Shown piece by piece: positions 2,233 to 50,580 of a DNA stretch of 64,000 nt; position 1 is the stretch's first letter; each line of letters opens with the position of its first letter. This stretch comes from Macrostomum hystrix (taxonomy: Eukaryota; Animalia; Platyhelminthes). The stretch covers positions 5,580,001-5,644,000 of the forward strand of contig CATNEN010000005.1 in the NCBI GenBank assembly GCA_950097015.1, written 5' to 3'. A program made the translations under genes and the position numbers. The notes beneath the pieces were generated by a model. That model was not told the DNA's origin. It saw only the letters and a program-made list of their open reading frames with translations, and did not search any database.

Positions 2233-2257
2233 CAAAAAGCACAAAAGTACTCAGGCG

Positions 2258-2890
2258 GTGCCAATCACTGCGGAAGCGGCGACACAAGCACGCAGGCCAA
2301 TTCTGAGCAGTGAGAGCAGCGGCTCAGACGAGGCACAAGTGGATCCGGGCGAGGATCTGTGGGCAGCCCTACAGCAGGGGATGCCCTCAGACGATGAGGG
2401 AGTTGCAGACCCCGACTCCGACCACAGCAATGAGTCCGAAATCAAAGGCCCAGCAGCACCTCCGGCTGCGGAGCTGCCCCCGCCTCGAGACTCATCCTCG
2501 GGGGAGAGCCCAGACGACCTGGGAGCGGCCGCTCGTCCGAGACGGCGCAGAGGGGGTGCCCAGCGGCGTCGGCAGCGACGTGCCCAATGGGAGGGCAGAG
2601 CTTCAGACCGTGAAGCGGCTACACAATTCGTGGCCGAATCGTTGGCACGTGCCGCCCGGGGCCAACTGGATGAAGGCTGGCCTGCCGCAGTACAGAGAGC
2701 TTTCGCCGGCGAAGAGAGATCTACGCGGCGAGAAATGGCTCAGGAGGCAGCAGCGCGGGCAGAGGTGGCCATCAATGGCCCGGCCAGGACGCCACACCAG
2801 TTAATGGCCCGATATGGCCTGGTCATGATTGAACTGGTAGAAGGATGGTGGCTGCCTGAGGCCATGCTGCGCATGTCAGCCTACTATTAG
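2258..2890 (+). CDS. ORF-B, orphan acidic/Arg-rich protein, 5'-truncated copy
   Basis: Colinear homolog of 40053-40961 (SSGSDEAQ, RRRRGGAQRRRQRRAQW, LMARYG, WWLPEA). Confidence 0.75.
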   Translation: MPITAEAATQARRPILSSESSGSDEAQVDPGEDLWAALQQGMPSDDEGVADPDSDHSNESEIKGPAAPPAAELPPPRDSSSGESPDDLGAAARPRRRRGGAQRRRQRRAQWEGRASDREAATQFVAESLARAARGQLDEGWPAAVQRAFAGEERSTRREMAQEAAARAEVAINGPARTPHQLMARYGLVMIELVEGWWLPEAMLRMSAYY

Positions 2891-4403
2891 TTCATGCATG
2901 ACTATCCAGTAGCGCCACAATTCGTGTATGCGCCGGTGCTTTGTTCCTTTGCATGTGCTATTATTAGTTTTTATTTGTTGTTGTCTTTTGTATGATCTTT
3001 CTGGTTATTAGCCTTGTAGGGTCCTTGCTAGTTTTTGTTTGTCTAAGCGCCATGAGCATTTTATTTTCACCTTGATGTTCTTGGCCTACGTTTTATTTTG
3101 CTACATAAGGTTACTGTTGTAGTGTGCTTTGTCCTTGTATACTTGTTTATCCAGCAGTTAATGCGCCACGTACACTTGTTTGTTTATGCGCCATGGATAA
3201 TTTTAATATGATCGCAACGTCTGTTCATGGCTGATTTGCTTAGTGTGACAATTACGTGCGTAAATACAAGGGATAAAAAAGGTGCTTACCTGAATTTGGT
3301 TTAAGTGCGGCTGACGGCCAGCCGGTGTTGACCGTCATCCTTTAGCTGGAGGAGAATGATGTGCTGTAGACTGCTGAGCAGCCTCCAGGCAATCTGTGAG
3401 TCAGGCTGTTCTAGGTCTGTGGGAGGGCTAGGGTTGGTTGTTAGTGTTTCCCGTGCACTGTCACCTCCGCTCGCCACCCCCTCCGCTCTCTCTCTCTCTC
3501 TTTCCAGCTTTGTCTGCGCACTGAATCACATTGCACACCATGGTGCAATCGCTTAAGTTCGGAAGACTGGCAGAACAACGCTCAAATGCTCCTACTATAA
3601 GTAGAGCACAGTCCGACGAATCCTTGAGATGGTGTTAGTGTCATGGTAGCACTATTTCTTTATATTGACGGCACTTTCTTGTCTCTTGTCTTCATGCGTC
3701 GGTTTCGAACTCCTGACCTTCCATCATTTTCCTTAGGCACAGTTCCAAGTGCAGGCGACGAGAAATATCCAGACAGAACCGTCCTCCAAGCTAGAGCTCA
3801 ATTCTCTAGTACGGTTTTAGGAGCTCGTCAGCTATATTATACTCTTGAGAGTATCCTCCCCTAGGGCCTAGGCTAGTTAGTTTCTCCTCTTCTCCTCCTT
3901 CCACAGGAGGTTTTTTTCTCTCCTCTTAGAGGAGCCCTCTCTCCCTGCGCCTTGCCGCGCCCCTTGCCCCCCTGCCCCTGCGCCTTGCTGCGCCCCTGCC
4001 TCTCTGCCCCCTGCGCCCTGCTGCGCCCCCTGCGCTTTCGTGCGCCCCTTGGCCCACGCCTTGCTGCGTCCCCTGCCTGTGTCCTGTGCCCTCTGCCCCC
4101 CCTGTCCGTGGAATACGCTTTCCCGTGCGTACCTCCACCGCGTTAGCTAACCCATCGCCTGCGCTCGGACCCCTGTCTTCTTCCTTCACTCTGCTTTCTA
4201 GTACTCTCTTTGCTCACCATATCCTGCATCACCTTTAACTTCGCTTCTCGACCGACGGACTCTCAGCATTTAGCAAATAAGAAATAAGCAGTTTTATAAG
4301 GCATTCTATTGCAGTTTTAAGTTTTATAAATATTACCTACAGTAGTACATACAGTTTTAAGTTTTATTTTTATTAAATTACAAGAAAAGTAGAATAGTTT
4401 AGC

Positions 4404-6751
4404 ATGCATCAAAATAAACAACAACAACAACAAAAGCAGCAGCAGCAGCAGAAGGACAAACGCCAATGCCAGTCGGCCAACGCCACCGCTAAGGCGACTC
4501 TAGAGCCTGATGACAAAAAGGCCAGGCGACAATCGGGAATACCGAAGCCAACTGACGATGCCACAACTATTCCGAAGAACAGCAGCGCTCCGGTGACCGT
4601 AAGTCCCATGGACACCTCCGACAACTCCTCAAATAAGGCACCTTCTGTAGAACAGGCACAGCCGTCCAAAGGTGTTCAATCTGTTCAATCTGACTCTTCT
4701 TCACAAATTCAACTCCAAGCCTACGACAGTCCACTCATCTCAACAAAAGTTTTTTTTCACAAAACCCCTCATCGGCGACTCATGCCCAATCTCGTTTTAT
4801 CCGCACGCCTTCAAAGACATTGCCAACGATCTGCTCACGACTCTCACAGCCGACATTCTGCCTCTCGCCTCACGCAATCACACCAATGGACGAGCTGAAC
4901 CTCGAAAAATCTTCTGGTACGGCCCACCTTATACGTACTCTGGTGAGACAATCCAGGGCAACTCCAACTGGCATCCAGCAATCTCCAATCTTGCAAGTCT
5001 CCTACACACTCAATTAGGCCTTCCTGCCTTCAATTCTTGTCTTGTAAACTTCTATGAAACAGGTGCCGACTCAATTGGTTATCACTGATGACGAACCTGA
5101 GCTCGGCAAAAATCCAACCATCGCTTCCATCTCCATCGGTGCTCCACGCGAATTCCGCATCCGCTCCAAATCATCTGGCATCACTCTCTTCACACAAACT
5201 CTGCCACACGGGTCGCTGCTCATCATGAAAGGGGACACCCAAACTCATACACAGCACGCTCTTCTTCGTGATCCATCTGTCAAAGACCTCCGCATCAACC
5301 TCACTTTCCGTGTCACCTCACCAGCCATTCATGACATCACCATTCTACAAGGCCAAGGTATCTCTGACCCTGAGTCAGCTCCTCCAGTTCCAAATGAGGT
5401 AGTTCCTCCGGTAGTTGATCCGACCAACTCCGAGGCCGCTGTAGCCGCTGCCGCAACATCGGAAGGTGGCTCCTTCCATTCGGTCGCCGGCTCGCGGCAC
5501 TCATCACCTCGCAGTCAAACGCAGCCTCAAGCCAAGATCGCGCCAGTGCTGTTCACCTTCAGCAACTTTCTCCCAGACGAGCTCCGGTTTGAGTTTCTGA
5601 AGTTTCTGAAGGCAAACTTCCCTGAAATCCGCATTCGCTCAGTCCAGCGCTGTTATCTAACGACCGGTTTTAAAGTTTTCGCGGTCGATCACAAGGGGGC
5701 TAACCACCTCCTGTCTGACGATCTCAAGACCTCCACGATAGACGGTCAAGGTGTTGAGCGCCGCCTGCCCTTGCGCAAGCCGGAAGCCCCACCAAATGCC
5801 AAGCCTAGACTCCCGACCAGTATTTCTGCCCCGAGAAGCCACTCGTTCATCATAAAGAATGTCAATCGAGAGATCGACCTGTCAGAATTCCTGGAACGCA
5901 TCAAATAATCCGAACCTCGCATTAGTGGTGTGGTACGCATCAAGTCTGCCGCAACCAATGAGCCCACCACTCTTGTTCGAGCATTCACGCTGAATGACGG
6001 AACTCTGTCCAGATGTCTCACCCAAGGAATAAAAATTGGGTACTTCCTGTACAAATGCGAGGAGTCACGCGCACCACCACCATTGCGAGCGACACAATGC
6101 CATAACTGCCAGGCCTTTGGCCACCTGGCCAGACAGTGTACTCGAGAGTCGCGCTGCCGGACCTGTGGCTACTCACATGAGCCAAATCAAGCTTACCAGG
6201 TTGAGAACCAGCGCTGTCCAAACTGCCGCGGACCTCACCGATCAACGGACAAGAACTGTCCTGCTTATATAGCCGCGAACCAGCGAGTCCAAACCTGGGT
6301 CCAGCGAAATCGACCCCAACTCGCTCGCCAAACGCCATTGGCTAATCCACCAGCCAACCAATCAAACTCCTTGCTCCAGGCACCAATCGGACACTTGCCT
6401 TCTGGTATTGGCCAACAACCCTTAGGCATCCGGCCGGGTCAGCCTTGCCTTAGCCAACCACAACAGACCTACGCCAGCATAGTTTCGGACAGTAGACTGG
6501 AGGCGGCGACCAGGCCCACCCGCCAGTCGTACAGTGGCCCAAAAGTGAGCAGCGGCGAGTTGCTACAGGCCGTTGCCTGCCTGCTAGTCCACTTCGCCTA
6601 CTCCGCTCCAGAACAGCGTAGCGTCGCTAGCCTGGTAGAGACCGCGGCCAAATTGATCGAGACAATCACTGGCTGGAAGTCCCCGGAGCTGACGACAGCC
6701 GTCATAGCGGAACGGTGTGAAAACCTAAAAGAAAATTTGTTAAACAATTAA
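4404..6751 (+). pseudogene. LINE ORF1: Q-rich N-terminus, AlkB 2OG-Fe(II) dioxygenase, RRM-like segments, CCHC knuckles
   Basis: AlkB motifs FNSCLVNFY, IGYH-DDE, H-ALLR, RINLTFR; knuckles CHNCQAFGHLARQC and CPNCRGPH. Two frameshifts (~4750, ~5085) and an in-frame TAA at 5906. Confidence 0.88.
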
Positions 6752-9719
6752 ATGAAATCCATTAGAAAGTTTTTATTAGCAAAGCCAAAAGTAAAACTTA
6801 AAACCCCCCACCACTCCTACAAAAAACTAAAAAGGCGAGAGTAAAAATAATAATAACAATTTCAAGGTAGATGAACTCACCATTCTCCACCTAAACTGCA
6901 ATAACATCCTTAACAAAATCTGGGAACTCAATGACTTCCTGAGAAGTCCATCTGTAGACATTGCCCTCTTTTCAGAAACAGCACTCACTAACACAAACAT
7001 AGTCTTTTTCCCTGGCTACTCCACCATTCGGTTGGATACGCCGCACTGCACCCGAGGTCTTCTCGTAGCCTATAGAGAATATATTAAACTTTCGGAAGTC
7101 AAAATCTCTTTCGACAACATTAACCACGAAACTATCTCTTTCAAAGTCCAGACTAACGATCCAAAGCTAGACCTTCTTAACGTCTCGCTTATATACAGGA
7201 ACCCGAGGCACGACAACCTCAACCTCACCCTCCTCAGTTCCCTCCTAACCAATCCCCACAGTTTAATTCTGGGGGACTTAAACTGTCGCTTCAGTGCCCT
7301 TGAGGGTCAAAGCGACGAAAACCCCGCCGGAAGGCAACTCCTTAGATGGCTATCCAACCATGACAGTGCGCCCATCATTCTAAATGAACCAGGCGTCCCC
7401 ACCCGCTACCAAAAAAGATCTGGCAACCTCAAGGGAAATATACTAGACCTAGGTCTATGCTCCCCAGACCTAGCACCTTTTATTACCGACTTCCAAATAC
7501 TAGATGATCTTGGCAGCGACCACCTACCCCTCCTAACAAAAATCGCTGTCAAACCCCAGAACAAACAACCAATCAAACCACCCATGTGCTATAATAGAAC
7601 TGACTGGAAACAGTTCCACCTCACCCTCGAAGAAAATATCTCAGCCATCTGGGATAACAACTTTAACCCAAAAACCCCTGCCGAAATTGATAACTCCATC
7701 GAAATGATGAATGATTTAATTCACCTTACCATAGATAAAGTAGTCCCAAGGTCCTCTCCCAGAGAGACCCTCCCTCCCAACATTATCCAACTCATTAAAG
7801 CCCGAAGGAGATTTAGAAAACTTTACCACACTACCAGAATAGATGACTTCCGAATCCACGCCAACAACATGGCCACTCAAATTAGGAAAGAAATATGGCA
7901 CTTTCGCAGCCAAAAATTCAATAACTTATGCGAAAAAATTGCAAAACTTAGCATCAACCCCTCCAACCCCAAGTTCTGGAAAGATATCAGAATCATCACG
8001 GGCACTCAGACCCAAATCACCCATTTCCCTTCCCTCACCTATCTCAACAAAACCGCCATCACTGACAAGGACAAAGCCAACTTGTTGGCTGAAGCCTTAT
8101 CAGACAAAATGAAACCCGAACCCAGCTCAAATAACAGACTCCGAACCAAGATCGCCAAACACATCACAAATCATCCAAACTTCAAGCCTCTAAATCACCT
8201 TGAAATCCTTAATACAAATGATCTAAATTATCTCACCGCACCCATTCAGATAGCAGACGTCACTTGGGAACTCGCCCACCTTAGGTCGGGAGGAGCCCAA
8301 GGACCCGACAATATTCCAAATGTAGTGCTAAAACGGGGCTTGAGCCCCACCGCAATTATCATCCTCACCAAAATCCTAGACACCTGTCTCTCCCTAGGAT
8401 ACTTCCCCACCATATGGAAAAAAGCTCGTCTAACGATGCTTCCCAAACCTGAAAAACCCAAAAATGACCCACTTAGCTATAGACCAATCACTCTTACCTC
8501 TTGCCTAGGTAAGCTGTTTGAAAAAATTCTTAAAAAAAAGACTATGCAAATTCCTAGAAGAAAACAACATACTAGGACACAATCAATGTGCCTACCGGGA
8601 AAAAACCCTGTGCCTACGACAACCTCGCCAGACTTGCCCAAGACATCTATGATGCCCGAAACAGAAATAGGTCCACCATAGGCGTCTTCTTTGACATCGA
8701 AGGTGCCTTTGACAAAGTATGGCATGATGCCCTGAGGTATCGCCTACACAAAATCAGACTTCCCATTCCCTTTTCTAGGGTCCTCTCAAACTACCTCGAA
8801 AACAGAAAAATCTCAGTCAGAGTCAATAACGAATTCAGCGATGAATTCACCCCAGATGCAGGCGTCCCACAAGGCGGCGTCCTAAGCCCTGTCCTCTTCC
8901 TAATCTTTGTAGCCACCATGCCCAGACCCAAAGACATCAGAGTCAGAGCCAGCCAGTATGCAGATGACACTGCAATATGGAGCCAGTCGCGAAAGGCCCA
9001 TCTTGCAGCCAAATTATTACAAGATTACATCCAAATTTTTCACAAATGGCTGAAAAAAATATGGTATCAAAGTAAATCCCCACAAAAGCAAAGCAATCAA
9101 ATTCCCCACTCAACACAGCTTCGGCCAACCCACTCCCATCACACTAGACAACACAATCATTCCCTACCACACTAACGTTAAGTTTCTTGGCATCCAACTG
9201 GATACCAAACTTAACTTCAACGCCCAAATCAACAGCCGTATAAAACAATGTGAAATCCGCCTTTTACAACTATACAAATTAGCACATCTAACAAATGCCA
9301 CTAACAAATCCCTGATTAGAATCTACAGAGCATACATAGAGAGCATGATATGTTATGCAGCACCAATTATGGTGTTGCTAAACAAAACCCAAATGAATAG
9401 GCTACAAATCATCCAAAATAGAGCACTCAGAATTTGCCATGGGGCACCCAAATATTGCTGCACAAAATACTTACACAAAATCTCGAACATGGAGCCGGTA
9501 AAGACCAGACTTGAAAACCTGGCTTCTTCCTGGTTCCTAAAAGGAAAGATAAACAAAATACATGGTCTAGATATCATTCCACATGACATTAGTCTCCTCA
9601 CTGGCACAAACACCCCTCTCTTCACTAGGCTATACAAACTATGTCAAACAAAAGGCCAAATAAAAACTCAAAACCAAAATAACTGTAAGACTGGCTGGCT
9701 CTGCCTAGACTCTGCCTAA
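6752..9719 (+). pseudogene. LINE ORF2: APE endonuclease plus reverse transcriptase, no RNase H
   Basis: ATG directly after the ORF1 stop; motifs LHLNCN, SET, GDLN, SDH, YRPITL, FDIEGAFDKV, GVPQGGVLSP, YADD. Several frameshifts, mostly in A-runs. Confidence 0.95.
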
Positions 9720-11522
9720 ACCCTGTCTCAAATATAGACCCTCGATAACACCCACCTAAACAATCACTTTTGGCTTTGCTGAGGAGTGTTTGGATTAAAA
9801 GAGTAATGTAACGGTTTAAATCTATCTTACCAGAAGCGAGCAGATTGCGTTTCAGCGTAGTCCGTAAGATATCTGAATGAGAAATCTCTTATCAAACTTC
9901 AATAAGCTTAGCTATATTATACCGCTCACTCTATGAGTCGAAAAACCTAATTTTCGTAAGGTCACTTCTGCTAAGATGGAAAAAAATAACTTAAATTACT
10001 ATATTTTGCACCAGTATACTGCATAACTTGCAAAAGTAATAGAAATCACGCATCCTGTCTAAGTAAAATTGAAATTGATTGAAATAGGAAATGAAATCAA
10101 ACAACAAAAAAGCTGTGTCTCGGTTCTAGACAAATCTACCACACAAGTATGTGAATTGCAATCTTGACTGTCATCATCAAACCGAGACGTGGGACGTTCC
10201 CCGCAGTTAGAATAATCTACCACAGGTTACCAGTGAACCACAAACACTGGGCCGGTGAATGCATATAGGCGCATATCGGCTTAACTTTGTCTCCTTGGTC
10301 TGAACTGAATCAGTTATACCAGTCATATTGGAATCGGTATTTATACCCTCAAAAATTAGACCCACCACAAAGAGAATTATCTCTTTTGGTAGGGTACCAA
10401 ACTTCACTACTCACAGTAACCAGTCTCAAAAATACGAGAAATAAAAAATAAAAATCCAACAAAATCAAAAACAAAATCAAAAACAAAATCAAAACAATTT
10501 TAAATTTACTTTGTGATACAAACATACATACCTCTGCTGCTTAGGAAACTTAGGGACATAGGGACTTAATGTAAAATGTTTTAGTTTTAATTTTAGTTTT
10601 ATTTGCCTATTTTCTGCATGCTTTATTTGTCATTTGTGCACTATTTGTTTTAATTGCTTTAGTTGTTTTATTTGTTTTATTTTCTATACTGATTTACTTT
10701 CTACATATCTACACTATGAATGCTGCACTCTTTTTTACTTTTACTTATTTTTGCAAATGCCCAATACATGCTGTTTTATACACCCAAAATATTTAAAATT
10801 CGTATTCAGATCTCATGCCAAAAAATCGACCCATCCATTTTTACATTACTAACTCGAAATCATGATTCTAAATACATAATGGTGCAAGAGCCCCCGGGCT
10901 GATGCACGGGTCCTGCAGTCCGGATAGGGCTACAGGCACCCAAACGTAGCAAACAAAAATCTTGTCTTCATGCGTTTGCGATTGCGTTTGCGTCCTTTGC
11001 AATCTTTGCATCGTGTGCATCCTTTCTGCTAACATTATTGTGAAGCGAGGCCGTGTGTTGCATTTAGAAGCATAGCACATCGCCAGACTTCAGAGCAGAG
11101 AAGCAAAGTAGTGGGAATTATTGCTTGAGTCTAAATAACGTCCGAGAAAACTTAGCAATCAAAGCCTGACTACCGGGTTGTTCCACTGCGAAGAAGCATC
11201 AGAGTGTGAGGCCGGATATTCTCTCTCTCTCGGAATCTAGTTCCTGTCTTGGTTATTTTACCAATTGTGTGTGCCACGCTACCACAGGTACAACAAATAA
11301 AAGCTATGGCCGCGATCAGTCATTCCTACAGGGGTCTAGACAGATCCAGGGAGAAGGGATTCGACGGCTACTTAATTCACCGCCGCCCAAAACCCGGCCC
11401 TAAGATTAATGACCGTGTTTGCGGCCAGCTGCTATGTGGGTCGCAATAATTAGATACTTAAAAATTTGAAAAATTATGCTGGCTCACATTTCCACTCGAT
11501 TCCCGCAGCACACTCCACATCA

Positions 11523-11545
11523 CTCCACCTTCGCTCACTTTCACG
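11523..11545 (-). promoter_or_regulatory. Polypurine tract of A1
   Basis: Minus-strand GAAAGTGAGCGAAGGTGGAG abuts the LTR TG; the equivalent lies at 44082-44101. Confidence 0.75.
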
Positions 11546-12278
11546 TAAGACACTTACGTGCCTACTGACAGTAGTAGCGGGGTGTCTCGAGAATCGAGGG
11601 GAAAAAATAATAAAAATTACCTACAACATACTGTACAGAACCCTAAGAAGAATTCCGCTAGAGAAGAAATCCCAACGCGTACATACGTACGTATGCTATA
11701 AATAGATTGGTGCGAGAGTATAGAATGGTCGGCGCCCCTAGTGATTACGATATAGCGTCCTATGGCGGTGGGTGCGCATTCCGGCCGCGGCGAATAGAGT
11801 TCCTCGATGCCCAGGGGTGTGCCTTGTCCTGGCTCGCCTTCTTCTCCAGGTGGTTGCAGCTGTGCCCATCTTCTCCTGCCCGGCTTGGTCTCGGTTGCGC
11901 AATCCTGGGTGCCCCGGCCGTCTTTCCTTGAGTCCGAGGGGTCCGGCCGTGCTCTCGCCAGGTGGTTCCAGGTTGGTTGACCCGTCTGCGTCCTCACCGA
12001 TCCTGTTGCCGGGCGTTGGTAGCCTCTGATTTGCCGCGCGCTCCAGGTGTTTCCGGCTGGCCGTGCCCGAGAATGCTCGCCGGGCCAGTTGCCTAGCCGT
12101 TGCGCGCGGCCCAATCGGCGCTGCAGCTGGTCGCAGCTGGGGAAACCGCTGCTCAGGCCGCTTGTGATGCTGTTGCCGGCCGAGGTGTCTCCTCACCGTA
12201 AAGGTCAGGGCCCCAACAACTAAACTGTCACTAGGGTCCCCCTATGCTGGAATTTCCCACATTCCCAACTGTCTTCCT

Positions 12279-12326
12279 ATTGGCTGGCGCTCCCGCCACT
12301 TTACCCTCTAAACTAAGTGCTATAAA
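12279..12326 (+). promoter_or_regulatory. Internal antisense promoter (inverted CCAAT, GC-rich box, TATA)
   Basis: ATTGG 12279 and TATAAA 12321; same arrangement at 44835-44883 and ~25570-25620. Confidence 0.7.
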
Positions 12327-12448
12327 GACAGCCACTTGACGCCCCATTAACTCAAGCCTGTTATCTCCAAACAACTAATTTTCCCGAGTGCCATTTTGGC
12401 TTTTATTCCTTGCCGGCCTACACTGAATTTCAACAGCCTACAGTCAAG

Positions 12449-13247
12449 ATGCTAGTGACCGCTCAGCCCAATACGCCCATCCTGGAGGCCGAAACTACCG
12501 TTCAGCCGCAGCCTGTTGAGGGAAGGTGAGTTATTTATGCTTCTACTCGGCCTCCCAAGGCCGGTTATTGAGGGGTTATTACGAGGTTAGTTGCATATCA
12601 ATTAGGCCTAAGTGAACATCAAATATGATCCCCGGCACACCCAACTCGCTTCCATCTACAATTGGTTCCTACCCGGGCCCAGATGCCCTCGCCCCGTTGT
12701 TAACTAACGAAACCCTGCTGGCAGTTTTAATTAGAGTGAGATTGGATTTTAATTTCGTAAATATTGCATGCGCTGGTGGTCATCACTATTGACAACTCAT
12801 AAGTTTTTCGCCCCCCCTACTTTTTAGAGATCATGTGCTGCAACCCGGCCCGAAAATTACGATCGCAATCTGTAAGTCGCCGCAGCTTTGTTCCTACAAC
12901 TCACCCTTAATTAGCCACCCGTTGGCATTCCCGCCCGTAGGATCCACCGTTGGAAAGAAAAACTCCCCGGAATAAAATCCGCTAAATCCCTACATCTGCG
13001 CCGCCCCCCTAAGGCCGCGGCCATAGTTACCTGATTACCATCCCTGATATATTATTCTACTTTATCCTACTGTTCTATTCTTAACCTAAAACTCCGTTCT
13101 CCCGCCACAGCTCTGGAACTGGCACCCGGCCAAGAGGCGGCCTTCGGCGCCATGCTGGGAGACCTGTTATTCGGCCCGAGCGGCCTCGCCATGGCGGCCG
13201 GCCTTCTGACCGCCGCAGGAATATTGTGGATGGCCCGCCGACGCTAG
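12449..13247 (+). CDS. Three-exon small protein with a C-terminal hydrophobic segment, 85 aa (exons 12449-12525, 12828-12871, 13111-13247)
   Basis: GT-AG introns in phases 2 then 1 give an open frame ending ...GLAMAAGLLTAAGILWMARRR. AATAAA at 13404. Same structure in A2. Confidence 0.8.
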
Positions 13248-14319
13248 TTGGGCCCGGAAAGTGGGAGCCCCACCGACATCCAAACTCAAGAGGCTAACAA
13301 TCGCCCAGCGCCAGTCAGGTGCTATTGTAAATACTGTACACATTCTGCTGCATGCCTTTTTTTTCTCCTTTTCCGCTATTTGTTACGTATTCGCATTTAA
13401 TCAAATAAATATTCAGGCCGTCCGAGTCGTGTGTGATACCTACGCAATCCTAGTTGTTAAATTCTTCCCTTCTTTCTCAAAAGGACTTATGCTATTCATA
13501 CTAAGCGAAACTCCAATTTGAAATGACAGCCCGTTCCCCCGAGCCTGCCCACTAAAGTTCGCTTCCTTACTAATAGTAAGTTTTTAATCTGGCCCGAAAA
13601 CACATAACATTGTTCTTACTTAGGTGCCCGCAGTTCCATTGACTCATCCTAGTTGTAAACATCCATGTTCCCTGGCTAAGTGTCCCTTCCTTCTCCGCGC
13701 ATTTCCCTGAGAAAAGAAGCCACCATTTGAAATCTGCCATCCCCCGAGCCAATGAGAACGCTTCCCTTAAGTCCTATTATATGCCCGATCGGTTCCTTGA
13801 TTTACGACTGCCCTCAGTAAACATAGAAGTTCCCAACATACCACCCCGCTCACTTTAGCGGGTTGGTATCCTTCCTAGAGTAGAAATTGTCCCGAGGTGA
13901 ACCCCACAGACCCACACGAAGCAAAAAGATAAGGAAGGGTGCCATTCATAATGCGGTGCGAATAATGTTAAATGTTTGAGAAGAAGAAGGTGCACTTCCT
14001 AGTTTGCTACAATTATTGAAAACATCCCATGCGAAACCTTACAAGGGGAATTTCACCCCATTACGTATGTTTTTGTGATTTTGGCTAGATTATAATAAAT
14101 TTTTTAAGTGGATTTTTTGGCGCCAAGATGGCCTCTTCGTTTGAAAAAGGAAGAATGCACAATAGGGGAGAAAAAGCAAAAGGTGCGCTGTGCGAATCAT
14201 TACTAGAGGGCAAGAGGGAGGAAAGAAAAATGGGGGAAAGATCGGTGGGCGGGGACCTATTGTAACAATGTCTCGTTGGAGGCTACCCCGATATTCGGGC
14301 CCTGAGTTTCTCTACCTAC

Positions 14320-14901
14320 CTAATCTTCCCTGATAGCTGTACTTTCCGCTAAGACCCCACTCACCTCCTCGTCCTCCTCGTCCTCCATCTGCATCACCAT
14401 GCGGCCCAGCGTGCTGTCCCCAGGCGGTGGCTCCTCGGCGATGCGATGCCCGTGGAGCCATCCTCGCTAGTCCGGATCCTCCGCTGACCGCAGGGTGATC
14501 TCTGGCATCCCGATCCGGCGCATGACGAGCTGATGCTCCAGCTCCGCTTCTCCAGGAATCCTCTTGGCCTGTAGCCAGGATGCAAGCTCATCGGGGACGG
14601 CGATACTCCAATCCTCCGGCGGGCAGTACTCCATCCACCGCAGGTTCAAGGGGAGGTCTGCTTCGTCTTCTCCCCTAGGCGGTAGAGGATCCCTCTCTTC
14701 ACACCACGCCTGGGCCAGCCACCTAGACTCGGCCAGCTGGCAGGCAAGGGCGAGGTCGACACCTGCTTGGGCCGCGCGTCCCAACATGGGCAGCAACCAC
14801 AGGCGGACCATCAGCCAGGTCCTCCTTCCTGCTAAATCGCGGCGATAATCCGTAGCGGCCACTTCCAGCCACCACGCCAGAACGGTTCCAGAACTAGACA
14901 T
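14320..14901 (-). pseudogene. Family A ORF3 (193 codons) with a premature TAG at 14467-14469
   Basis: Same length as, and highly similar to, 47049-47630; a W codon is replaced by a stop. Confidence 0.85.
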
Positions 14902-15053
14902 GCCTTCCGCTAGAAATGAAATATCTATCCTAAGAATGAAATGAATGTCTCCCACTACACTTGCGGCTCTCCCTCTAAATAGTATCAAGGGGGGAGAAGG
15001 GGGGAAAGAGAAGGGGAGGGGGGAAAAATGGGAAGGGAGGAAGTTCCTCGATC

Positions 15054-15619
15054 CTAAAGAGCAGGCCTCCGCCTGAGCGAGAAAGGGATAGATTGGCTGT
15101 AGATAATTAGATTTCGCGAGTCAAAATCGAGAATGGCGTGATGGTGAGCCAACCAGGAAGCGCCTAGCAGGGGAGAGCAGTCGCCCTCGACCACTAGGAA
15201 TAGAGTGTCCAGTGCTTCGGCGCCAACCTGTAATTTGATCCTGACTTGCGCGAGTGCAACAATTGGTGTGCCATTGTAAGCAATTAGTGAAAATTGAGGG
15301 GGTTCGAATGGAAACTGTCGGATGATTGATGATAGCGAGTCCGGGAGCACATTTGATCATAGATCCATAGGACCATAGATCCAGTGTCGATCAACAGGTC
15401 AAGGGGTGCCCCGTCCACCTCCAAGGCGACCCACACCTCACTGAGCTTCTCAGAGCGGTTGGGGCGGGTGCGCACTCGGGTGGGGACTCGGCCGAGTGAG
15501 TTCACTCGGACTTCTCGTTGGGCGGAGGCAGCGGGTGCCGCCGCTCCGATTGTCGGGCCGCTGGCTGGGTCGCGGAGCCGCTGGCCTGCCTCCAATTGGC
15601 GGCCCCGCTCCCGTTTCCC
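15054..15619 (-). pseudogene. Retropepsin protease of A1, frameshifted
   Basis: LLIDTGS...LLGASWL; a 17-bp insertion follows the DTG motif; slippery G GGA AAC at 15613-15619. Confidence 0.88.
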
Positions 15620-16490
15620 ATCGCCTGCTCTGCGCCAGCCTCCCTAGCAGCTCCCTTCTCCGCGCGCTTTGGGTGCCATTGATGCCAATTCGGATGCGGG
15701 CAGAGAGGGGGAATGGGGTTAGGCCTGACTTCTAGCAGCTGCTGAGCGATCTCGGCTAGCTGTTGGGTCACTCTAGCCAACTCTTCTGCGAGCTGGTGCG
15801 GCTGCCCTGGCTGGCTCTGTTCTTCCTCAGGTTCTGCCCTACTTGGCGCACCCGTCGGCGAGGGTCGCGCTCAGCGGCCATCTCAAAGGCCTGCGTGGCG
15901 GCTCGCAGTTCGGCTGCGGCGTCCTCTGCCGTGGCGAATTCCAGTCTCATGACCGGCGCCAGGACCTCCGGGGCGGCTACGATTCCCTCCATAAAGGAAG
16001 CCAAAAGGGCCCGCTCAAAGTGCACGCCGCGGCCATTAGGGGTGGCCTGCAGAGCGGCGGTTCTCAGTCGGTCCGCGAAGGAGGTGTAGGTCTCCCCACG
16101 CTCCTGCTTCAGGAGCCGGGCGTAAGGGGTGCAGGTACCACTGAGACTCTCGGTCAGGTCCTGCACAAACCCTGCATGGGTCCCACCACGGGGCAGACCC
16201 ATCGCCTCGGTGAGGGGTTCGCCACACAAATGGGCCAAAAGGGTAAGGATCTTTTCTTCATCCGCCTCCAGGCCCTCCGCTTACAGTTTCAGGTCGAAAC
16301 GGCGCAGCCAGAGGGGGAACGAATCCTTTCGGGATTCGTAGGGTTCAATGGCGACTTTAACCCGATGATTACGGGGTCGCCGCAGGTCGATGCGCTCTAA
16401 AAGTAGCGCCAAACGCTCTAAGGGGTCGGCGTGCTGAGCTGCAGCAGCCGCTGGGGGTTCGGCGCGCGCCCTGAAAGCAGGCCCTGCATG
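15502..16490 (-). pseudogene. gag of A1
   Basis: Homologous to 48208-49245. The start was lost in a ~0.9-kb deletion; there is an in-frame TAA at 16281 and a frameshift near 15840. Confidence 0.88.
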
Positions 16491-16961
16491 CTGCCCAAGA
16501 GAACCAATCCCCGGTGCTCGGCGAGTCATCGATTCCCGGCTGCATTGCCGGGGGCTCCCCTCGCTCGGTTAGAAGGCCGTAAGGCATTGCCTGGTCCCTC
16601 GTTAAGAATGGCCCCTCCCAGAATAGTCACGCGGGAAACGCCACAGACAGTCCCTGACTCCTACAGCAGCCACATAACCCGAAGACACTCTAGCATGAAG
16701 TCCGCTCACACAGCCTACTCATAGTAGAAAGTCACTTATCAAAATTTTGGAAATTCTAACAAAAACTAAATTAAATTGAAATCAAATTGCAACTGTTCGG
16801 AAATTAATTGACAGTCACTAGAACTGAGATTCACTATTTAGAGATAAGATTTCGGCATACGGAAAATGAAATCTAGAAGGAGCCCTTTCGGCTAGCTACC
16901 ACAGAAATCTGCGGCGCTAAACTAACAATTGAAATTCAAGTTCGTTTCGCGCCCTTTCTAG

Positions 16962-16981
16962 ATCCCACCCCGGTGCCACCA
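16962..16981 (-). promoter_or_regulatory. PBS of A1, variant of a tRNA-Leu PBS
   Basis: TGGTGGCACCGGGGTGGGAT, 2 nt after the LTR CA. Confidence 0.8.
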
Positions 16982-16983
16982 TT

Positions 16984-19314
16984 TGAAATGGTTAGGGCTT
17001 TTGCAAGCCGATGACCGCCCTCATGAAAAGATAGGAGTGTGGAAAACGACGGTAGAGTCGAAAGGTCGATCGCGCTGCTGCCGCGAGTTGTCGCGGAGAG
17101 GGATGAGATGAAGGGAGGGATGAAGGGAGAGATGAAGGGTGAGATGAGGCGGTACAAAGGATGCAAGGAGCGGTCCTATTGGCCTCAGGCTGGCCAGTTC
17201 CACTCGTCCCATAGGCCACAGGCATGACTGCCGTGCCTACCCCTAGCAATGCTCGAACCCGGCTAAAAGTCTAAAGTGAGGCATCGGACTATCCGTAGAC
17301 AGATAGGACAGGGCTAGAGAGCCTACTGTCGTCAGTAGCATGTAAATAACCGACTCCTAACCTTGGTAGCGGTGGTCGAAACGGCCCAGGCTCTTGTCAC
17401 AGAAATGCGGAAAGGCTATTGGCAAAGCGGAAAAAGATCTCGGGTAGCGCCACCACCCAATGCGCCTACGTTGCCACCGCAGACATTTGGGAACTTGGGT
17501 CCCCGGAGTACACAGCTCCCAGTTCATCACACAGATCTAGACAAGCCGAAAAATAGGGCATTCTGCAACTTCCGTTTTAGACTGGGGTGAGAGCCCCAGA
17601 ATGGATCGAGACACGCCTCAACAGGGGATTCCTGAATTCGCGCTACAGGGGTCTAGAAAGGTGGTACTGAGAACTCGAATGAAAATCCATAGCCGGAATC
17701 CTACTCATGAAACATCAGACACATTCCGTACATTAGATTGCAGCCTACACATTAGGTAACTAACAAATCCGAATCTGTGTGAGATGAGGAAATCAGAGGC
17801 AGGAGAGATTAAGCAGAACACTGGCTGAGTGATTACGCAAGCGAAAGACTATTTAGACCTCGCTCCCGCCCCTGTGGCGGTAGTTGCGAGAGGAGGGGGG
17901 AAAGAAGGGGAACTCCATTGGCAAGGGAGTTTGACACGTACCCCTTTGATCTGCCGGGGAGAGAGAGAAGCCCGCCAAGGAATCCCCCGCACCCCAGCAG
18001 AGGTGCACATGCTACGCTCCGCATCTGCCCGCGAATCCCTAGCTCCATATTACTCTTGTGCGCGCTCACAGTTGTCTTCCTGCCGCAGCCTTCAGCTCGG
18101 CATCACCAGAGCCCACCCCCTAGGAGATTAGCCACTCATCTCTGAGGGCTGTCTAATAGATAAAATAAACATAGAGAATAAAGCAGAGTGAGTTTAAATT
18201 GTTATTAAAGATTTGCCTATGGTTAAAGATTTGGCGATAGTGCTAATTTATTAAGCCAAACAGTCCAAATGCCCTTTCCCCACTAAAGTGCCGCCTAATT
18301 AAAGAAAAGTCCCTTAGGACTAACAATTACAAACCGCTGCGCGGGTTACTTATCTGGATGCTGATTCGGCCGCGTGCTGCAATCCTGTAGCTCTCGGGGA
18401 AGGGATAGGGCAAAACAGCAAGGCAGAGAAGGGGAAACTGCTGCGAGTTGGCAGGGGCCAACACACTGGGAGCACAGTGGCTCAATTTAGAGCTCACCTA
18501 AAGAGGTGGCTTGCGCTTAGGGGAATGGAAACAGGCAATGGGCCTGTACTAGCTGCACGGAGCTCAAGCTCAAGGGTCTAAGCCCTACTTGGGTCCGGAA
18601 AGTGCTGTGGGTCCGGTGGGAGTCCGGCCCGGCAAAGAGATAGGTCCGGGGAAAAGGTAAGGTAAGGGGAAGGGTTCTTCTAAGGGCAGCGCAGCGCGCT
18701 TCCTTAAATAGTCTTGCAGCACGCCAACCCCGACATCCATCAAAATAACCCACATTCGCGCCCGCCTGTCAACGGGGAATCGAAGCGGCGATGGCCGCCC
18801 CGATTACCCAATGAACCGACGGCGAGAACCGACAGATGCTCCTCGAGAGCAGCCGCCGGCAGACGGCCAATAATTGTTACTCCGCCGGGACAATGGGAAG
18901 CGCAGGCGCCGACCTGCCTACAGTGACATTTACATGTATCTAAAGGAGGGAGGTCATAAAGTCGAGCTGGGCTCGAATACTGTAAAGAAGTGGGGACATG
19001 AAGAATTAATGATCACTCATAATGCCCGAGTGATTCCCAATATCTGATCGCGGTTTGGAGGAGAATTATGACCTAAACTACTCATACAATAAAAGCTATG
19101 GCCGCGATCAGTCATTCCTACAGGGGTCTAGACAGATCCAGGGAGAAGGGATTCGACGGCTACTTAATTCACCGCCGCCCAAAACCCGGCCCTAAGATTA
19201 ATGATCGTGTTTGCGGCCAGCTGCTATGTGGGTCGCAATAATTAGATACTTAAAAATTTGAAAAATTATGCTGGCTCACATTTCCACTCGATTCCCGCAG
19301 CACACTCCACATCA
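16984..19314 (-). repeat. 5' LTR of A1 (2331 bp)
   Basis: Uninterrupted TG...CA copy flanked by the PBS and the satellite. Confidence 0.93.
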
Positions 19315-19798
19315 CATGATTCAAACTCTGGTGTAGCCATGATTTAGTCTCTGGTTTAGCCATGATTCAGACTCTGGTTTAGCCATGATTCAAACTCTGG
19401 TTTTGCCATGATTAAGACTCTGGTTTAGCCATGATTCAGACTCTAGTTTAGCCATGATTGAAACACTGGTTTTGCCATGATTCAGACTCTGGTTTAGCCA
19501 TGATTCAAACTCTAGTTTAGCCATGCTGATGATGATGGTTTAGCCATGATTCCGACTCTGGTTTAGCCATGATTCAAACTCTGGTGTAGCCATGATTTAG
19601 TCTCTGGTTTTGCCATGATTCAAACTCTAGTTTAGCCATGATTCAGACTATGGTTTTGCTATGATTCGAACTCTGGTTTAGCCTTGATTCAGACTCTGGT
19701 TTAGCCATGATTCAGACGCTGGTTTAGCCATGATTCAAACTCTGGTTTAGCCATGATTCAGACTCTGGTTTAGCCATGATTCAAACTCTGGTTTAGCC
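19315..19798. repeat. 23-bp satellite, continued
   Basis: About 20 tandem units of the repeat at 1-138. Confidence 0.95.
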
Positions 19799-24660: not shown

Positions 24661-25655
24661 AGACAGGCAATGAGCCTGTGAGCGCTAGCTGAGCTTATAG
24701 CTCTAAGTCTGAACTCTAAGTGGGGGGAAATAGGTCCGGAAGATCCGTCGGGGGAAGACGGGTCCACCAAGTTTAAAGTGGAAAAGAAGGTCCTAGGGGG
24801 AGCAGCGCAGCGCGCTTGCTTAAATAGTCCTGCAGCACGCCAACCTCGGCATTCATCAAAACCCACATCCGCGCCAGCCTGTCATCGAGGAATCGAAGCG
24901 GCGATGGCCACCCCGATTACCCAATGAACCGGCGGCGAGAAACGACAGATGCTCCTTTACGAGCAGCCGCCGGCAGTCGGCCAATAATTGTTACTCCGCG
25001 GGAACAATGGGAAGCGCAGGCGCCGACCTGCCTACAGTGACATTTACATGTATCTAAGAGAGGAGGTCATAAAGTCGAGCTGGGCTCGGGTACACTAAAG
25101 AAGCGAGGACATGAAGAATTATTGATCACTCATAACGCCCGAGTGATTCCCGATATCTGATCGCGGTTTGGAGGGGAATTATGACCTAAGCTAGCTTATA
25201 CAGGCTCCGGCCGTTTTCTCCTTGAGTCCGAGGGGTCCGGCCGTGCTCTTCCCAGGTGGTTCCAGATTGGTTGTCCGTTTGCGCCCTCGCTAATGCCGTT
25301 GCCGGGGCTTGGTAGCCTCTGATTCGCCGGGCGCCCAGGTGTTCCCGGCTGGCCGTGCCCGTAAATTCTCGCCGGGCCAGTTGCCTAGCCGTTGCGCGCG
25401 GTCCAATCGGCGCTGCAGCTGGTCGCAGCTGGGGAAACCGCTGCTCAAACCGCTCAGTGATGCTGGTGTCGGCCGCTGGATCTCCGCACCGAAAAGGTCA
25501 GGGCCCCAACAACTAAACTGTTACTATGGGCCCCCTATGCTGGATTTTCTTAAATTTCCATCTGACTTCCAATTGGTCGGCGCTCCCGCCACCATGACCC
25601 CTAATCTAAGTGCTATAAAAACAGCCACTTAACGCCCCATTAAACCCAAGCGTTG
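24660..25655 (-). mobile_element. Family A third-subfamily fragment: partial LTR fused by deletion to the internal GC block and antisense promoter
   Basis: Matches LTR sequence 18530-19080, then the internal region 11920-12355. Confidence 0.85.
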
Positions 25656-44081: not shown

Positions 44082-45019
44082 CACCGCCTTCGCTCACTTT
44101 CACGTAAGGCACTTACGTGCTTACTGTCAGTAGTGGGGTGTTTCGCGAATCGAGGGGCAAAGAAATTTACATTACCCTACTGCATACCGTAAAGAATCCT
44201 AAGAAGAAAACCGCTAGAGAAGAAATCCTAGGTTATCGTACGTAAAATACTGCTATAACTAGATTTGTGCGAGAGTAAAAAAACGGTCGGCGCCCCTAGC
44301 GACTAAGGGATAGAGTCCTGAGGGGAGGTGGGTGCGCATTCCGGCTGAGTTAAAGTTGTTCTCGTTGCCCAGGGGTGCCGTGTCCCGGCTCGCCTTCTCC
44401 TCCAGGTGGCTGCAGCTGTCCCCGTCTTTCCTTGCCCGGCTTGGTCTTGGTTGCGCAATCCCGGGAGGCTCCGGCCGTTTTCTCCTTAAGTCCGAGGGTC
44501 CGGCCGTGCTCTTCCCCAGGTGGCTCCGGGTTGGTTGGTCCGTTCGCGCCTTCCCGATTCCGTTGCCGGGCCGTGGTAGCCTCTGATTCGCCGCGCGCCC
44601 AGGTGTTTTCAGCTGGCCGGGCCCGAAAATTCTCGTCGGGCCGGTTGCCTAGCCGTTGCGCGCGGCCCAATCGGCGCTGCAGCTGGTCGCAGCTGGGGAA
44701 ACCGCTGCTCAGGCCGCTTGTGATGCTGTTGCCGGCCGAGGTGTCTCCTCACCGAAAAGGTCAGGGCCCCAACAACTAAACTGTTACCATGAGCCCCCTA
44801 AACCGGTTCTGCCCGGAATTCCCACTGTACTCCCATTGGCTGGCGGTTAGACCGCCACGTCTCCCTAAATTAGCCCTATAAAAGCAAACACTTGGCGCCC
44901 CATTAACCTCAAGCCTCTTTATCTCCTAAACAAACACCTTACCTACCGCTAGCTTGTCTGCAATCGCCACCTAGCCTGCGTCGCCCGACTAGCTAAATAC
45001 GTGCTCTGCTCCTTGTACT

Positions 45020-50578: not shown

Positions 50579-50580
50579 TT

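What the first reader, a model, noticed from the sequence alone, without database searches (positions are those of the whole stretch)
12279..13409. Hidden three-exon antisense gene for a small membrane protein inside the LTR element
This gene is absent from the ORF track. A CCAAT/TATA promoter, ATG, two GT-AG introns and AATAAA are conserved in both subfamilies. Intron phases (2, 1) are identical even though the middle exon is 44 nt in one and 77 nt in the other. Products: MLVTAQPNTPILEAETTVQPQPVEGRDHVLQPGPKITIAISLELAPGQEAAFGAMLGDLLFGPSGLAMAAGLLTAAGILWMARRR (85 aa) and MAQPQSEEESFLPGPYEPVRQRSGSGEPITMSFIMNINVPEGREAGVAAIAYVFLRGSAGRVLGAATAVVALVVAITLWLF (81 aa). They share QPQ, a beta-like ITI/M stretch, PxG(Q/R)EA and a Gly/Ala-rich C-terminal hydrophobic helix. 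Introns survive retrotransposition because they are antisense to the genomic RNA. In A1 this is the only ORF still intact. Inference: a tail-anchored protein acting as an env substitute or fusogen (by analogy to viral FAST proteins), a VLP membrane tether, or a host-manipulating factor.
Basis: partly seen in the sequence, partly recalled or inferred. Interest (0 to 1): 0.92.

Follow-up and report, generated by a model that had tools for sequence, protein, structure and literature searches.

The report
Spliced antisense gene inside LTR retrotransposon
Two diverged copies of a non-autonomous LTR retrotransposon each carry, on the strand opposite to gag, what looks like a real small gene with its own promoter, two introns and a poly(A) signal; it would encode an orphan protein of about 80 residues with a membrane anchor at its very end, which is a rare variant of the known "antisense accessory ORF" of retrotransposons, but nothing supports the idea that it is an envelope or cell-fusion protein.

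Summary
Both three-exon models translate to the quoted 85-aa and 81-aa products.

An objective splice-model search of both strands finds such models at only three loci. Two are these models; the third is a Helitron gene. Chance gives about 0.8 loci.

Other support:
- Exons are GC-richer than introns, and their codon usage resembles the element's gag.
- The ATTGG/TATAAA promoter is conserved in three copies with identical 42-nt spacing.

The two subfamilies differ by dS about 0.63. Only the promoter, the end of exon 1 and the start of intron 1 align. Exons 2-3 share architecture but no demonstrable sequence homology. An ORF that survives this divergence in both lineages argues for selection on coding capacity.

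No homologue exists in any library searched. There is no expression evidence and there are only two copies.

Best reading: a spliced antisense accessory gene for a tail-anchored membrane protein. The env/fusogen idea fails because there is no ectodomain. This is a new variant of a known kind, of moderate interest.

The parts
12040..12240 (+). Conserved upstream block of the A1 antisense gene. Sub-block 12103-12202 is 99% identical to B, the most conserved 100 nt of the whole element. It contains a CCAAT and two CAGCTG boxes.
12279..12326 (+). A1 core promoter: ATTGG (12279-12283) and TATAAA (12321-12326), 42 nt apart. The predicted transcription start near 12350 is an inference.
12449..12525 (+). 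A1 exon 1, coding part. It starts at the first ATG after the TATA box. The last ~29 nt are homologous to B exon 1.
12526..12827 (+). A1 intron 1 (302 nt, GTGAGT..TAG, phase 2). The first ~100 nt are conserved with B and hold a CGGCC-N6-GGCCG hairpin.
12828..12871 (+). A1 exon 2 (44 nt).
12872..13110 (+). A1 intron 2 (239 nt, GTAAGT..CAG, phase 1).
13111..13247 (+). A1 exon 3, coding part including stop TAG 13245-13247. It encodes the Gly/Ala-rich hydrophobic C-terminus.
13404..13409 (+). A1 AATAAA poly(A) signal, 157 nt after the stop.
44835..44882 (+). B core promoter: ATTGG (44835-44839) and TATAAA (44877-44882), 42 nt apart.
45020..45048 (+). B exon 1, coding part (29 nt). It starts at the first ATG after the TATA box.
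45049..45316 (+). B intron 1 (268 nt, GTGAGT..CAG, phase 2).
45317..45393 (+). B exon 2 (77 nt).
45394..45567 (+). B intron 2 (174 nt, GTAAGT..CAG, phase 1). It is stop-free and in frame, so its retention would keep the frame open, but its codon score is not coding-like.
45568..45707 (+). B exon 3, coding part including stop TGA. It encodes a strongly hydrophobic C-terminal helix.
45799..45804 (+). B AATAAA poly(A) signal, 92 nt after the stop.
41773..52891 (-). Element B. LTRs are 41773-44083 and 50581-52891 (99.96% identical, TG..CA ends). A PBS-like site sits just inside the 5' LTR and a purine tract next to the 3' LTR. No RT or integrase.
164..19315 (-). Element A1. The 3' LTR is 164-2232 plus 11296-11523, split by a nested non-LTR element. 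The internal part is 11524-16983. The 5' LTR is 16984-19315 and the LTR pair is 99.9% identical. The sense genes are broken.
2233..11295 (+). Nested non-LTR (LINE-like) retrotransposon inside the A1 3' LTR. It is a neighbour, not part of the gene.
48211..49320 (-). B gag-like reading frame (370 codons; weak Gag_p24_C match).
47780..48349 (-). B retropepsin-like protease frame (190 codons; weak matches to gag-asp_proteas and DDI1).
47052..47672 (-). B ORF-X, a sense-strand orphan frame. Its 140-codon core shows dN/dS 0.08 against A1.
14470..15120 (-). A1 ORF-X counterpart.
24790..25651 (-). Third, truncated copy (C3). It holds an LTR piece, the conserved block and the same ATTGG/TATAAA promoter, then ends where a Helitron gene begins.

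Best explanation
The region is an independent RNA polymerase II transcription unit nested in the 3' internal part of a non-autonomous LTR retrotransposon and oriented antisense to gag and protease. The element has gag-like, protease-like and orphan ORF-X frames but no RT or integrase.

Proposed mechanism:
- A conserved upstream block plus an ATTGG/TATAAA core promoter, about 750-800 bp inside the 3' LTR boundary, starts transcription toward the interior of the element.
- The pre-mRNA loses two GT-AG introns and is polyadenylated after AATAAA, still inside the element.
- The mRNA encodes an 81-85-residue protein. It has an acidic, Pro/Gln/Glu-rich and probably disordered N-terminal half, then a short hydrophobic helix, a turn, and a Gly/Ala-rich transmembrane helix that ends the protein. 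This is a tail-anchored topology with the N-terminus in the cytosol.
- The introns are antisense to the genomic RNA, so they are copied intact at every retrotransposition.
- Selection acts on keeping a spliced open frame with a C-terminal anchor, not on the exact residues.

Shown: the anatomy, its rarity against chance, its coding-like composition, promoter conservation, and ORF persistence across dS of about 0.63.

Inferred: transcription, splicing, translation, membrane insertion, and the role. The role I think most likely is a membrane-anchored accessory factor of the element, comparable in kind to small retroviral accessory membrane proteins. It is not an entry or fusion protein.
For: - Both models translate exactly as quoted, with consensus splice sites and identical phases.
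- They are unique solutions of an objective enumerator. Only 3 loci in 128 kb give such a model, against 0.78 expected by chance. The third locus is a genuine spliced Helitron gene, which shows the host uses GTRAGT donors and introns of similar size.
- Exon GC is 0.50-0.68 against 0.42-0.49 for introns and UTRs. The codon-position pattern matches the element's gag.
- The annotated frame is the best of six in 5 of 6 exons. Exon 3 lies in the top 3% (A1) and top 1% (B) of stop-free control stretches.
- The promoter motifs and their 42-nt spacing are conserved in three copies, and the first ATG after the TATA box is the start codon.
- The 100 nt lying 120-220 nt upstream of the TATA box are the most conserved part of the element: 99% identity, against 81% median for the LTR and 79% for sense coding DNA.
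- Neutral divergence between the subfamilies is dS 0.63. In a substitutions-only simulation an 85-codon ORF survives that in 1.4% of runs, yet both lineages keep the ORF, the splice sites and the phases.
- Both insertions are young, with LTR pairs 99.9-99.96% identical, so both subfamilies carried an intact gene when last active.
- A hydrophobic C-terminus is present in both products.
Against: - There is no expression, junction or peptide evidence.
- Only two copies carry the gene, both from one window.
- No homologue turned up in any search. No relatives of the element were found either, so conservation in further copies could not be tested.
- Exons 2-3 are no more similar between subfamilies than introns at the DNA level. 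tblastn does not link the two products. Protein similarity is marginal: exon 3 p about 0.02, whole protein z about 3. The two genes could therefore be only analogous.
- The enumerator's criteria were set after seeing the models.
- The A1 anchor is only borderline hydrophobic (1.62) and contains Asp and Pro.
- The spliced products could not be given to topology, structure or database tools.
Confidence: 0.6

Rival explanations
1. The antisense transcript itself is the functional product. It could be a regulatory RNA that pairs with the 3' part of the sense RNA, or promoter activity that modulates the element, for example copy-number control or siRNA production. The open frame would be incidental or only weakly translated.
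For: The strongest conservation is in the promoter block and the first 100 nt of intron 1, not in the coding exons. Exons 2-3 evolve at about the neutral rate at the sequence level. Regulatory antisense RNAs are documented for micropia, TART and IAP, and are discussed for plant elements (PMC7264820).
Against: A non-coding RNA does not explain why an ATG-initiated frame stays open through three exons in both lineages at dS 0.63. Nor does it explain the gag-like codon usage of the exons, the absence of upstream ATGs, or the fact that both products end in a hydrophobic anchor.
Confidence: 0.17
2. It is a real spliced gene but a passenger. A host gene, or part of one, was captured in antisense orientation by an ancestor of both subfamilies and is carried along without a role in the element's life cycle.
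For: Transduction is a proposed origin of antisense additional ORFs (PMC7264820, PMC11963269). The unit is self-contained, with its own promoter, introns and poly(A) signal. Both carriers are non-autonomous elements, which tolerate cargo.
Against: No host paralogue or any homologue was found. A neutral passenger should have lost its frame at dS 0.63. The promoter block is the most constrained sequence of the element.
Confidence: 0.12
3. It is a chance pattern. The region is GC-rich and hypervariable, open frames and GT/AG pairs happen to line up, and the conserved block and TATA-like motif serve the sense RNA or DNA of the element, for example as an export or packaging signal near the 3' end.
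For: GC-rich DNA here is full of spurious stop-free runs on all frames. The conserved segments lie outside exons 2-3.
Against: The chance expectation for such a model in one 1.2-kb single-strand region is about 0.007, and it occurs at the homologous place in both copies. Codon-usage and GC contrasts appear independently in both copies. The conserved block shows no RNA-structure signal on either strand, with z of -0.6 and -0.1.
Confidence: 0.06
4. One reading: the protein replaces an envelope protein or acts as a FAST-like cell-cell fusogen that lets the element spread between cells.
For: It is small and membrane-anchored, and it sits where env lies in retroviruses, between the last sense gene and the 3' LTR.
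Against: The anchor is at the extreme C-terminus, with 0-3 residues beyond it. There is no signal peptide, no ectodomain, and no polybasic endodomain after a central transmembrane segment. The orientation is antisense, unlike env. No envelope or FAST family was hit in Pfam.
Confidence: 0.03

Closest known systems
Antisense additional ORFs between pol and the 3' LTR of plant Ty3/gypsy elements (aORF-3R: maize Grande gene23, rice RIRE2, Silene Retand / TRP28 ORFs)
   Same: Same position (between the last sense gene and the 3' LTR), antisense orientation, and own upstream promoter (shown experimentally for Grande gene23). The ORFs are family-wide and orphan, and they also occur in non-autonomous members (PMC7264820, PMC11963269).
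   Different: Those ORFs are long (over 600 bp), are described as continuous with no introns mentioned in either review, and are nuclear or DNA-binding (TRP28, SMC). Here the ORF is about 250 nt split by two introns, the product is a tail-anchored membrane protein, and there is no TRP28 hit. The host is unknown and the carrier lacks RT and integrase.
HTLV-1 HBZ and other retroviral antisense genes
   Same: An antisense gene in a retroelement that is expressed from a spliced mRNA (PMC10186651; established knowledge).
   Different: The HBZ promoter lies in the 3' LTR and the product is a nuclear bZIP factor. Here the promoter is internal, about 750-800 bp from the LTR, and the product is a small membrane protein.
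HIV-1 antisense protein (ASP)
   Same: An antisense-encoded, strongly hydrophobic, membrane-associated orphan protein of a retroelement (established knowledge).
   Different: ASP is unspliced, about 190 residues, has several hydrophobic segments and overlaps env. Here the gene overlaps no sense ORF and has one C-terminal anchor. No sequence relation was found.
Drosophila TART antisense transcripts with introns; Penelope elements that disperse intron-containing genes
   Same: Both are retroelements in which introns persist through retrotransposition (TART: PMC1636488; Penelope: PMC3846280).
   Different: TART is a non-LTR element. Penelope keeps introns through an unusual replication mechanism, and that paper states that other retrotransposon types do not disperse intron-containing genes. 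Here an LTR element would do so simply through antisense orientation.
Reovirus FAST proteins
   Same: Small size and a single membrane-spanning segment.
   Different: FAST proteins have an N-terminal ectodomain, a central transmembrane segment and a polybasic cytoplasmic tail (established knowledge). Here the anchor is terminal and there is no ectodomain, so a defining feature is not met.

Membership tests
LTR retrotransposon (the carrier element) | Direct long terminal repeats with TG..CA ends, a PBS next to the 5' LTR and a purine tract next to the 3' LTR | tested here: met
   LTR pairs are 99.9% (A1) and 99.96% (B) identical. TG..CA ends, a TGG-started PBS-like site and a purine tract are present, which fixes the element sense as the minus strand.
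LTR retrotransposon (the carrier element) | gag and pol (protease, RT, RNase H, integrase) | tested here: not met
   Only weak gag-like and retropepsin-like matches. There is no RT, RNase H or integrase in any minus-strand frame of the young copy B. The element is therefore non-autonomous.
Antisense additional ORF of LTR retrotransposons (aORF-3R class) | Located between the last sense gene and the 3' LTR, antisense to gag | tested here: met
   The gene lies at 12449-13247 and 45020-45707 on the plus strand. gag, protease and ORF-X are on the minus strand at higher coordinates, and the 3' LTR is at lower coordinates.
Antisense additional ORF of LTR retrotransposons (aORF-3R class) | Present in all or most copies of the family | tested here: inconclusive
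   It is present in 2 of 2 full-length copies, and its promoter is in a third truncated copy. No further copies could be retrieved.
Antisense additional ORF of LTR retrotransposons (aORF-3R class) | Transcribed from its own promoter | not testable with these tools
   Only sequence motifs are available: ATTGG and TATAAA with conserved 42-nt spacing, plus a 99%-conserved upstream block.
Retand/Grande TRP28 or gene23 protein family | Sequence homology (Pfam PF04195 Transposase_28 or relatives) | tested here: not met
   The exon-containing reading frames hit no such Pfam family at E<=1; the only hit was an insignificant C19orf12-like match, E 0.15.
Tail-anchored membrane proteins | A single hydrophobic segment within about 30 residues of the C-terminus, a very short tail after it, and no N-terminal signal sequence | tested here: inconclusive
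   B has a Kyte-Doolittle 19-mer maximum of 2.47 at residues 62-80 of 81. A1 has a borderline 1.62 at residues 64-82 of 85, followed by three Arg. The N-termini are polar. No dedicated topology predictor could be run on the spliced products.
Reovirus FAST fusogens | N-terminal ectodomain, central transmembrane segment, polybasic cytoplasmic tail | tested here: not met
   The hydrophobic segment is C-terminal with 0-3 residues after it. No family hit.
Retroviral / errantiviral Env | Sense-strand gene, signal peptide, large ectodomain with fusion peptide, transmembrane anchor | tested here: not met
   The gene is antisense, the product is 81-85 residues with no signal peptide, and no Pfam envelope family was hit.
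HBZ-type retroviral antisense gene | Antisense promoter inside the 3' LTR; bZIP product | tested here: not met
   The TATA box lies about 800 bp inside the internal region, at 12321 against an LTR end at 11523, and at 44877 against 44083. No bZIP hit.

The most novel reading that the evidence does not exclude
An LTR retrotransposon family routinely disperses an intron-containing, protein-coding gene by carrying it antisense. The product would found a new family of tail-anchored retroelement accessory proteins kept by selection even in lineages whose gag and protease have decayed. It would act in the element's own cycle, for example by placing gag assemblies on an organelle membrane or by helping a non-autonomous element exploit its autonomous partner.
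Probability: 0.25. Interest if true: 0.75.

Novelty: new variant of a known kind. Interest (0 to 1): 0.55.

Why it matters
Antisense accessory ORFs of LTR retrotransposons are known, but their functions are not, and those described are long, intronless and nuclear.

A compact, intron-bearing antisense gene for a membrane-anchored protein would matter for three reasons:
- It would show that LTR elements can stably spread intron-containing genes. That affects how retrocopies and 'orphan' small genes are annotated, because this gene is invisible to ORF tracks.
- It would widen the range of retroelement accessory proteins beyond nuclear regulators.
- It would give a tractable case of selection for 'an open frame with an anchor' at near-neutral sequence divergence.

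If it is only a regulatory antisense RNA, it is still a clear example of an internal, strongly conserved antisense promoter in a non-autonomous element.

Tried and rejected
Searches that found nothing:
- Relatives of the element or the gene. B gag against 5.8 billion proteins. The A1 exon-3 frame, length-matched. The B exon 2-3 frame by full HMMER against 1.84 billion representatives.
- Exact look-ups of the window ORFs gag, ORF-X and the B 145-aa ORF.
- A 24-nt pattern from the ultraconserved block in metagenomes.
- ORF-X profile scans of metagenome, viral and prokaryote genome contigs.

Restriction on the spliced product:
After that I sent the spliced products to no outward tool and searched window-encoded pieces only. 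No DeepTMHMM-type or AlphaFold result exists for the mature proteins.

Host identity:
- The best LINE ORF2 hit is 39% identical, on an unnamed Logan contig. Run and assembly accessions appear in no paper. There are no tRNA or Rfam genes in the window. The source organism remains unknown.

Other dead ends:
- ORF-X structure prediction gave pLDDT 41, unusable, so I ran no fold search.
- The ultraconserved block and the intron-1 hairpin gave no significant fold, no covariation and no Rfam match.

Ideas rejected:
- That the third copy shows the same promoter driving a different cargo gene. The ORF after it (STPR repeats, Helitron_like_N) belongs to a Helitron that cuts the copy off.
- That the unalignable gene body requires hyper-evolution or module swapping. 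dS 0.63 makes unconstrained DNA unalignable anyway.
Full report
**Setting**

The window is transposon-dense eukaryotic DNA from an unidentified, poorly sampled organism. A self-comparison and the LTR ends define two full-length copies of one LTR-retrotransposon family, both on the minus strand.

- A1 spans 164-19315. Its LTR pair is 99.9% identical. Its 3' LTR is split by a 9-kb non-LTR element at 2233-11295.
- B spans 41773-52891, with LTRs 99.96% identical.
- The orientation is fixed by three features: a TGG-started PBS-like site just inside the higher-coordinate LTR, a purine tract abutting the lower-coordinate LTR, and minus-strand gag-like and retropepsin-like frames.
- Neither copy has RT, RNase H or integrase in any frame. 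The family is therefore non-autonomous.
- A third, truncated copy (C3, 24790-25651) keeps an LTR piece and the region up to the antisense promoter.

**The observation**

- A1: ATG 12449; exons 12449-12525, 12828-12871 and 13111-13247, with stop TAG at 13245-13247. It yields the quoted 85-aa product.
- B: exons 45020-45048, 45317-45393 and 45568-45707. It yields the quoted 81-aa product.
- Donors are GTGAGT and GTAAGT in both copies. Acceptors are YAG after pyrimidine tracts. Phases are 2 and 1 in both. The middle exons differ by exactly 11 codons.
- ATTGG and TATAAA are 42 nt apart in A1, B and C3. No ATG lies between the TATA box and the start codon. AATAAA follows the stop by 157 nt (A1) and 92 nt (B).

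**Is it more than chance?**

I wrote a rule-based enumerator. Its rules were: donor GTRAGT; acceptor YAG with at least 10 of 15 pyrimidines upstream; introns of 60-400 nt; two introns; product of at least 75 aa.

- Over both strands of the window it returns models at three loci only. The A1 and B models are each the single solution at their locus. The third locus is a gene at 26763-28497, which Pfam shows to be a Helitron Rep/helicase gene.
- That third locus also shows that the host uses such donors and introns of 170-400 nt.
- Forty composition-matched simulations give 0.78 loci per 128 kb. That is about 0.007 for one given 1.2-kb single-strand region.
- The criteria were set after seeing the models, so the figure is somewhat generous. 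Even so, two hits at homologous places downstream of a conserved TATA box are not plausibly chance.

**Coding signal**

- Exons are GC 0.50-0.68. Introns and UTRs are GC 0.42-0.49. The codon-position pattern (G-rich first position, GC2 about 0.5, high GC3) matches the element's gag.
- With a codon table trained on the element's own sense frames, the annotated frame is the best of six in five of six exons, and all introns score negative in all frames.
- Against 542 stop-free control stretches from the same window, exon 3 ranks in the top 3% (A1) and top 1% (B). An off-by-one frame was corrected.

**Conservation**

- ORF-X, a sense-strand orphan frame, gives dS 0.63 and dN/dS 0.08 between A1 and B. 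Unconstrained DNA between the subfamilies is therefore expected to be about 57% identical before indels, and hence unalignable.
- Against that background, several parts are clearly constrained: the LTRs (median 81%); the stretch from the 3' LTR to the promoter (83%); the last 29 nt of exon 1; donor 1; and the first 100 nt of intron 1.
- The 100 nt at 12103-12202, which lie 120-220 nt upstream of the TATA box, are 99% identical. This is the most conserved part of the whole element.
- The rest of intron 1, exon 2, intron 2, exon 3 and the 3' UTR show no DNA similarity. tblastn does not connect the two products.
- Protein alignment is colinear but weak. The whole protein gives z 4.1 against plain shuffles and about 3 against segment-preserving shuffles. 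For exon 3, the coding frame pair is the best of nine, with p about 0.02.
- So the two products share an architecture rather than demonstrable homology: a polar Pro/Gln/Glu-rich N-terminal half with PGP and an I-T-x-x-x-I stretch, then P-x-G-(Q/R)-E-A, then a short hydrophobic helix, a turn and a terminal Gly/Ala-rich helix.
- This low sequence constraint is itself informative. A substitutions-only simulation leaves an 85-codon frame open in only 1.4% of runs at 0.63 substitutions per site. Indels and splice-site loss would lower that further. Yet both lineages keep the start codon, the frame, four consensus splice sites and the phases.
- Because both insertions are very young, this reflects the state of the active source copies, not post-insertion luck.

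**The A1 'only intact ORF' claim**

Relative to B, A1's gag-like frame has one frame switch and one in-frame stop, and lacks part of its N-terminal region. The protease frame has one frame switch. ORF-X has one in-frame stop. The antisense frame is intact. Given that it is about nine times shorter than the sense frames together, intactness by chance has a probability above one half. This point therefore adds little.

**What it most likely is**

It is a self-contained pol II gene, antisense to the element, whose introns persist because the genomic RNA carries their reverse complement. This class is known: antisense additional ORFs between pol and the 3' LTR, with their own promoter (Grande gene23, RIRE2, Retand TRP28; PMC7264820 and PMC11963269).

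Those ORFs are long, are described without introns, and are nuclear or DNA-binding. No TRP28 or other significant family match is found here. HTLV-1 HBZ is spliced and antisense, but it starts in the LTR and encodes a bZIP protein. HIV-1 ASP is antisense and hydrophobic, but unspliced. A paper on Penelope elements states that other retrotransposon types do not disperse intron-containing genes (PMC3846280). That makes this arrangement in an LTR element worth noting.

**Function**

The hydrophobic segment ends the protein in B. In A1 three Arg follow it. The N-termini are polar and lack a signal sequence. That is the signature of a tail-anchored protein with its bulk in the cytosol.

An envelope substitute or FAST-like fusogen needs an extracytoplasmic domain, so that reading is rejected.

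I favour a membrane-anchored accessory factor of the element. This is inferred, not shown. The main rival is a regulatory antisense RNA. That rival fits the conservation pattern (promoter and early intron more conserved than exons) but not the persistent frame, the codon usage or the shared anchor.

**Limits**

- There are no expression data.
- There are only two copies and no relatives anywhere.
- The host is unknown.
- I do not repeat it, and I give only counts of breaks.

Noticed in passing
window 12103-12202 (B: about 44660-44760; C3: about 25395-25495): A 100-nt block 120-220 nt upstream of the antisense TATA box is 99% identical between subfamilies whose neutral divergence is dS 0.63, which makes it the most conserved part of the element. 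It holds a CCAAT box and two CAGCTG boxes. It shows no RNA-fold signal on either strand and no Rfam match. Whether it serves the antisense promoter or the sense RNA/DNA is unexplained.
   Followed up: partly
window 12546-12565 and 45068-45087 (start of intron 1): A conserved hairpin, CGGCC-N6-GGCCG, lies about 20 nt after donor 1, inside a 100-nt stretch of intron that is better conserved than the exons. With two sequences there is no covariation to judge it.
   Followed up: partly
window 47052-47672 (-) and 14470-15120 (-): ORF-X is a sense-strand frame downstream of the protease. Its 140-codon core is 89% identical in protein between subfamilies (dN/dS 0.08), far more constrained than gag (75%) or protease (77%). 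It has no Pfam or PDB match, and the AlphaFold model was unusable (pLDDT 41).
   Followed up: partly
window 41773-52891 and 164-19315: Both young copies lack RT, RNase H and integrase but keep gag-like, retropepsin-like and ORF-X frames between 2.3-kb LTRs. This is a recently active non-autonomous family whose autonomous partner is not in the window.
   Followed up: partly
window 2233-11295 (+), ORF 5054-5908: The non-LTR retrotransposon nested in the A1 LTR carries a CCHC ORF1, an APE endonuclease and an RT. Upstream of them is an ORF with the C-terminal half of an AlkB-type 2OG-Fe(II) oxygenase domain (PF13532, E 3e-16). AlkB/m6A-demethylase domains have been reported in orchid Ty3/gypsy elements (PMC9289625), but I know of none in LINEs.
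   Followed up: no
window 25572-28497 (+): In the truncated third copy, the element's antisense ATTGG/TATAAA promoter is followed, with no intervening ATG, by the start codon (25745) of a Helitron protein. That protein has 23-residue STPR repeats encoded by 69-bp tandem repeats, and a Helitron_like_N domain at 27779-28114. The Helitron gene itself appears spliced (donors at 26841 and 27627). This could be a simple insertion or a promoter capture; one copy cannot tell.
   Followed up: partly
window 138-163 versus 16958-16983; satellites 1-137 and 19316-19890: A1 is inserted in an array of 23-bp tandem repeats. A second copy of its about 26-nt PBS region sits outside the 3' LTR, so the repeat shared by both ends is LTR plus PBS. 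This suggests an aberrant reverse-transcription or recombination product.
   Followed up: partly
window 19087/19088 equivalents (2232/11296 in A1; 25202/25204 in C3): The LINE insertion in the A1 LTR, which removed 35 bp of the target, and the internal deletion breakpoint of copy C3 fall at the same LTR position, just before an AATAAAAG motif. This may be a preferred endonuclease target.
   Followed up: no
window 41223-41643, 52905-53060, 58556-58906: Fragments related to the nested LINE (3285-3675 and 11134-11294) flank element B on both sides and recur at 58.5 kb. B may have landed in an older LINE copy.
   Followed up: no
window 37601-38317 (+); 28335-29108 (+); AT-rich blocks 20-24 kb and 32-36 kb: There is a DUF4218 (CACTA-type transposase-associated) fragment and an RNase H fragment. 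Two blocks of 32-38% GC hold long ATG ORFs (22018-22929, 34652-35476) with no Pfam match. An 18-bp tandem array lies at 20507-20806.
   Followed up: no
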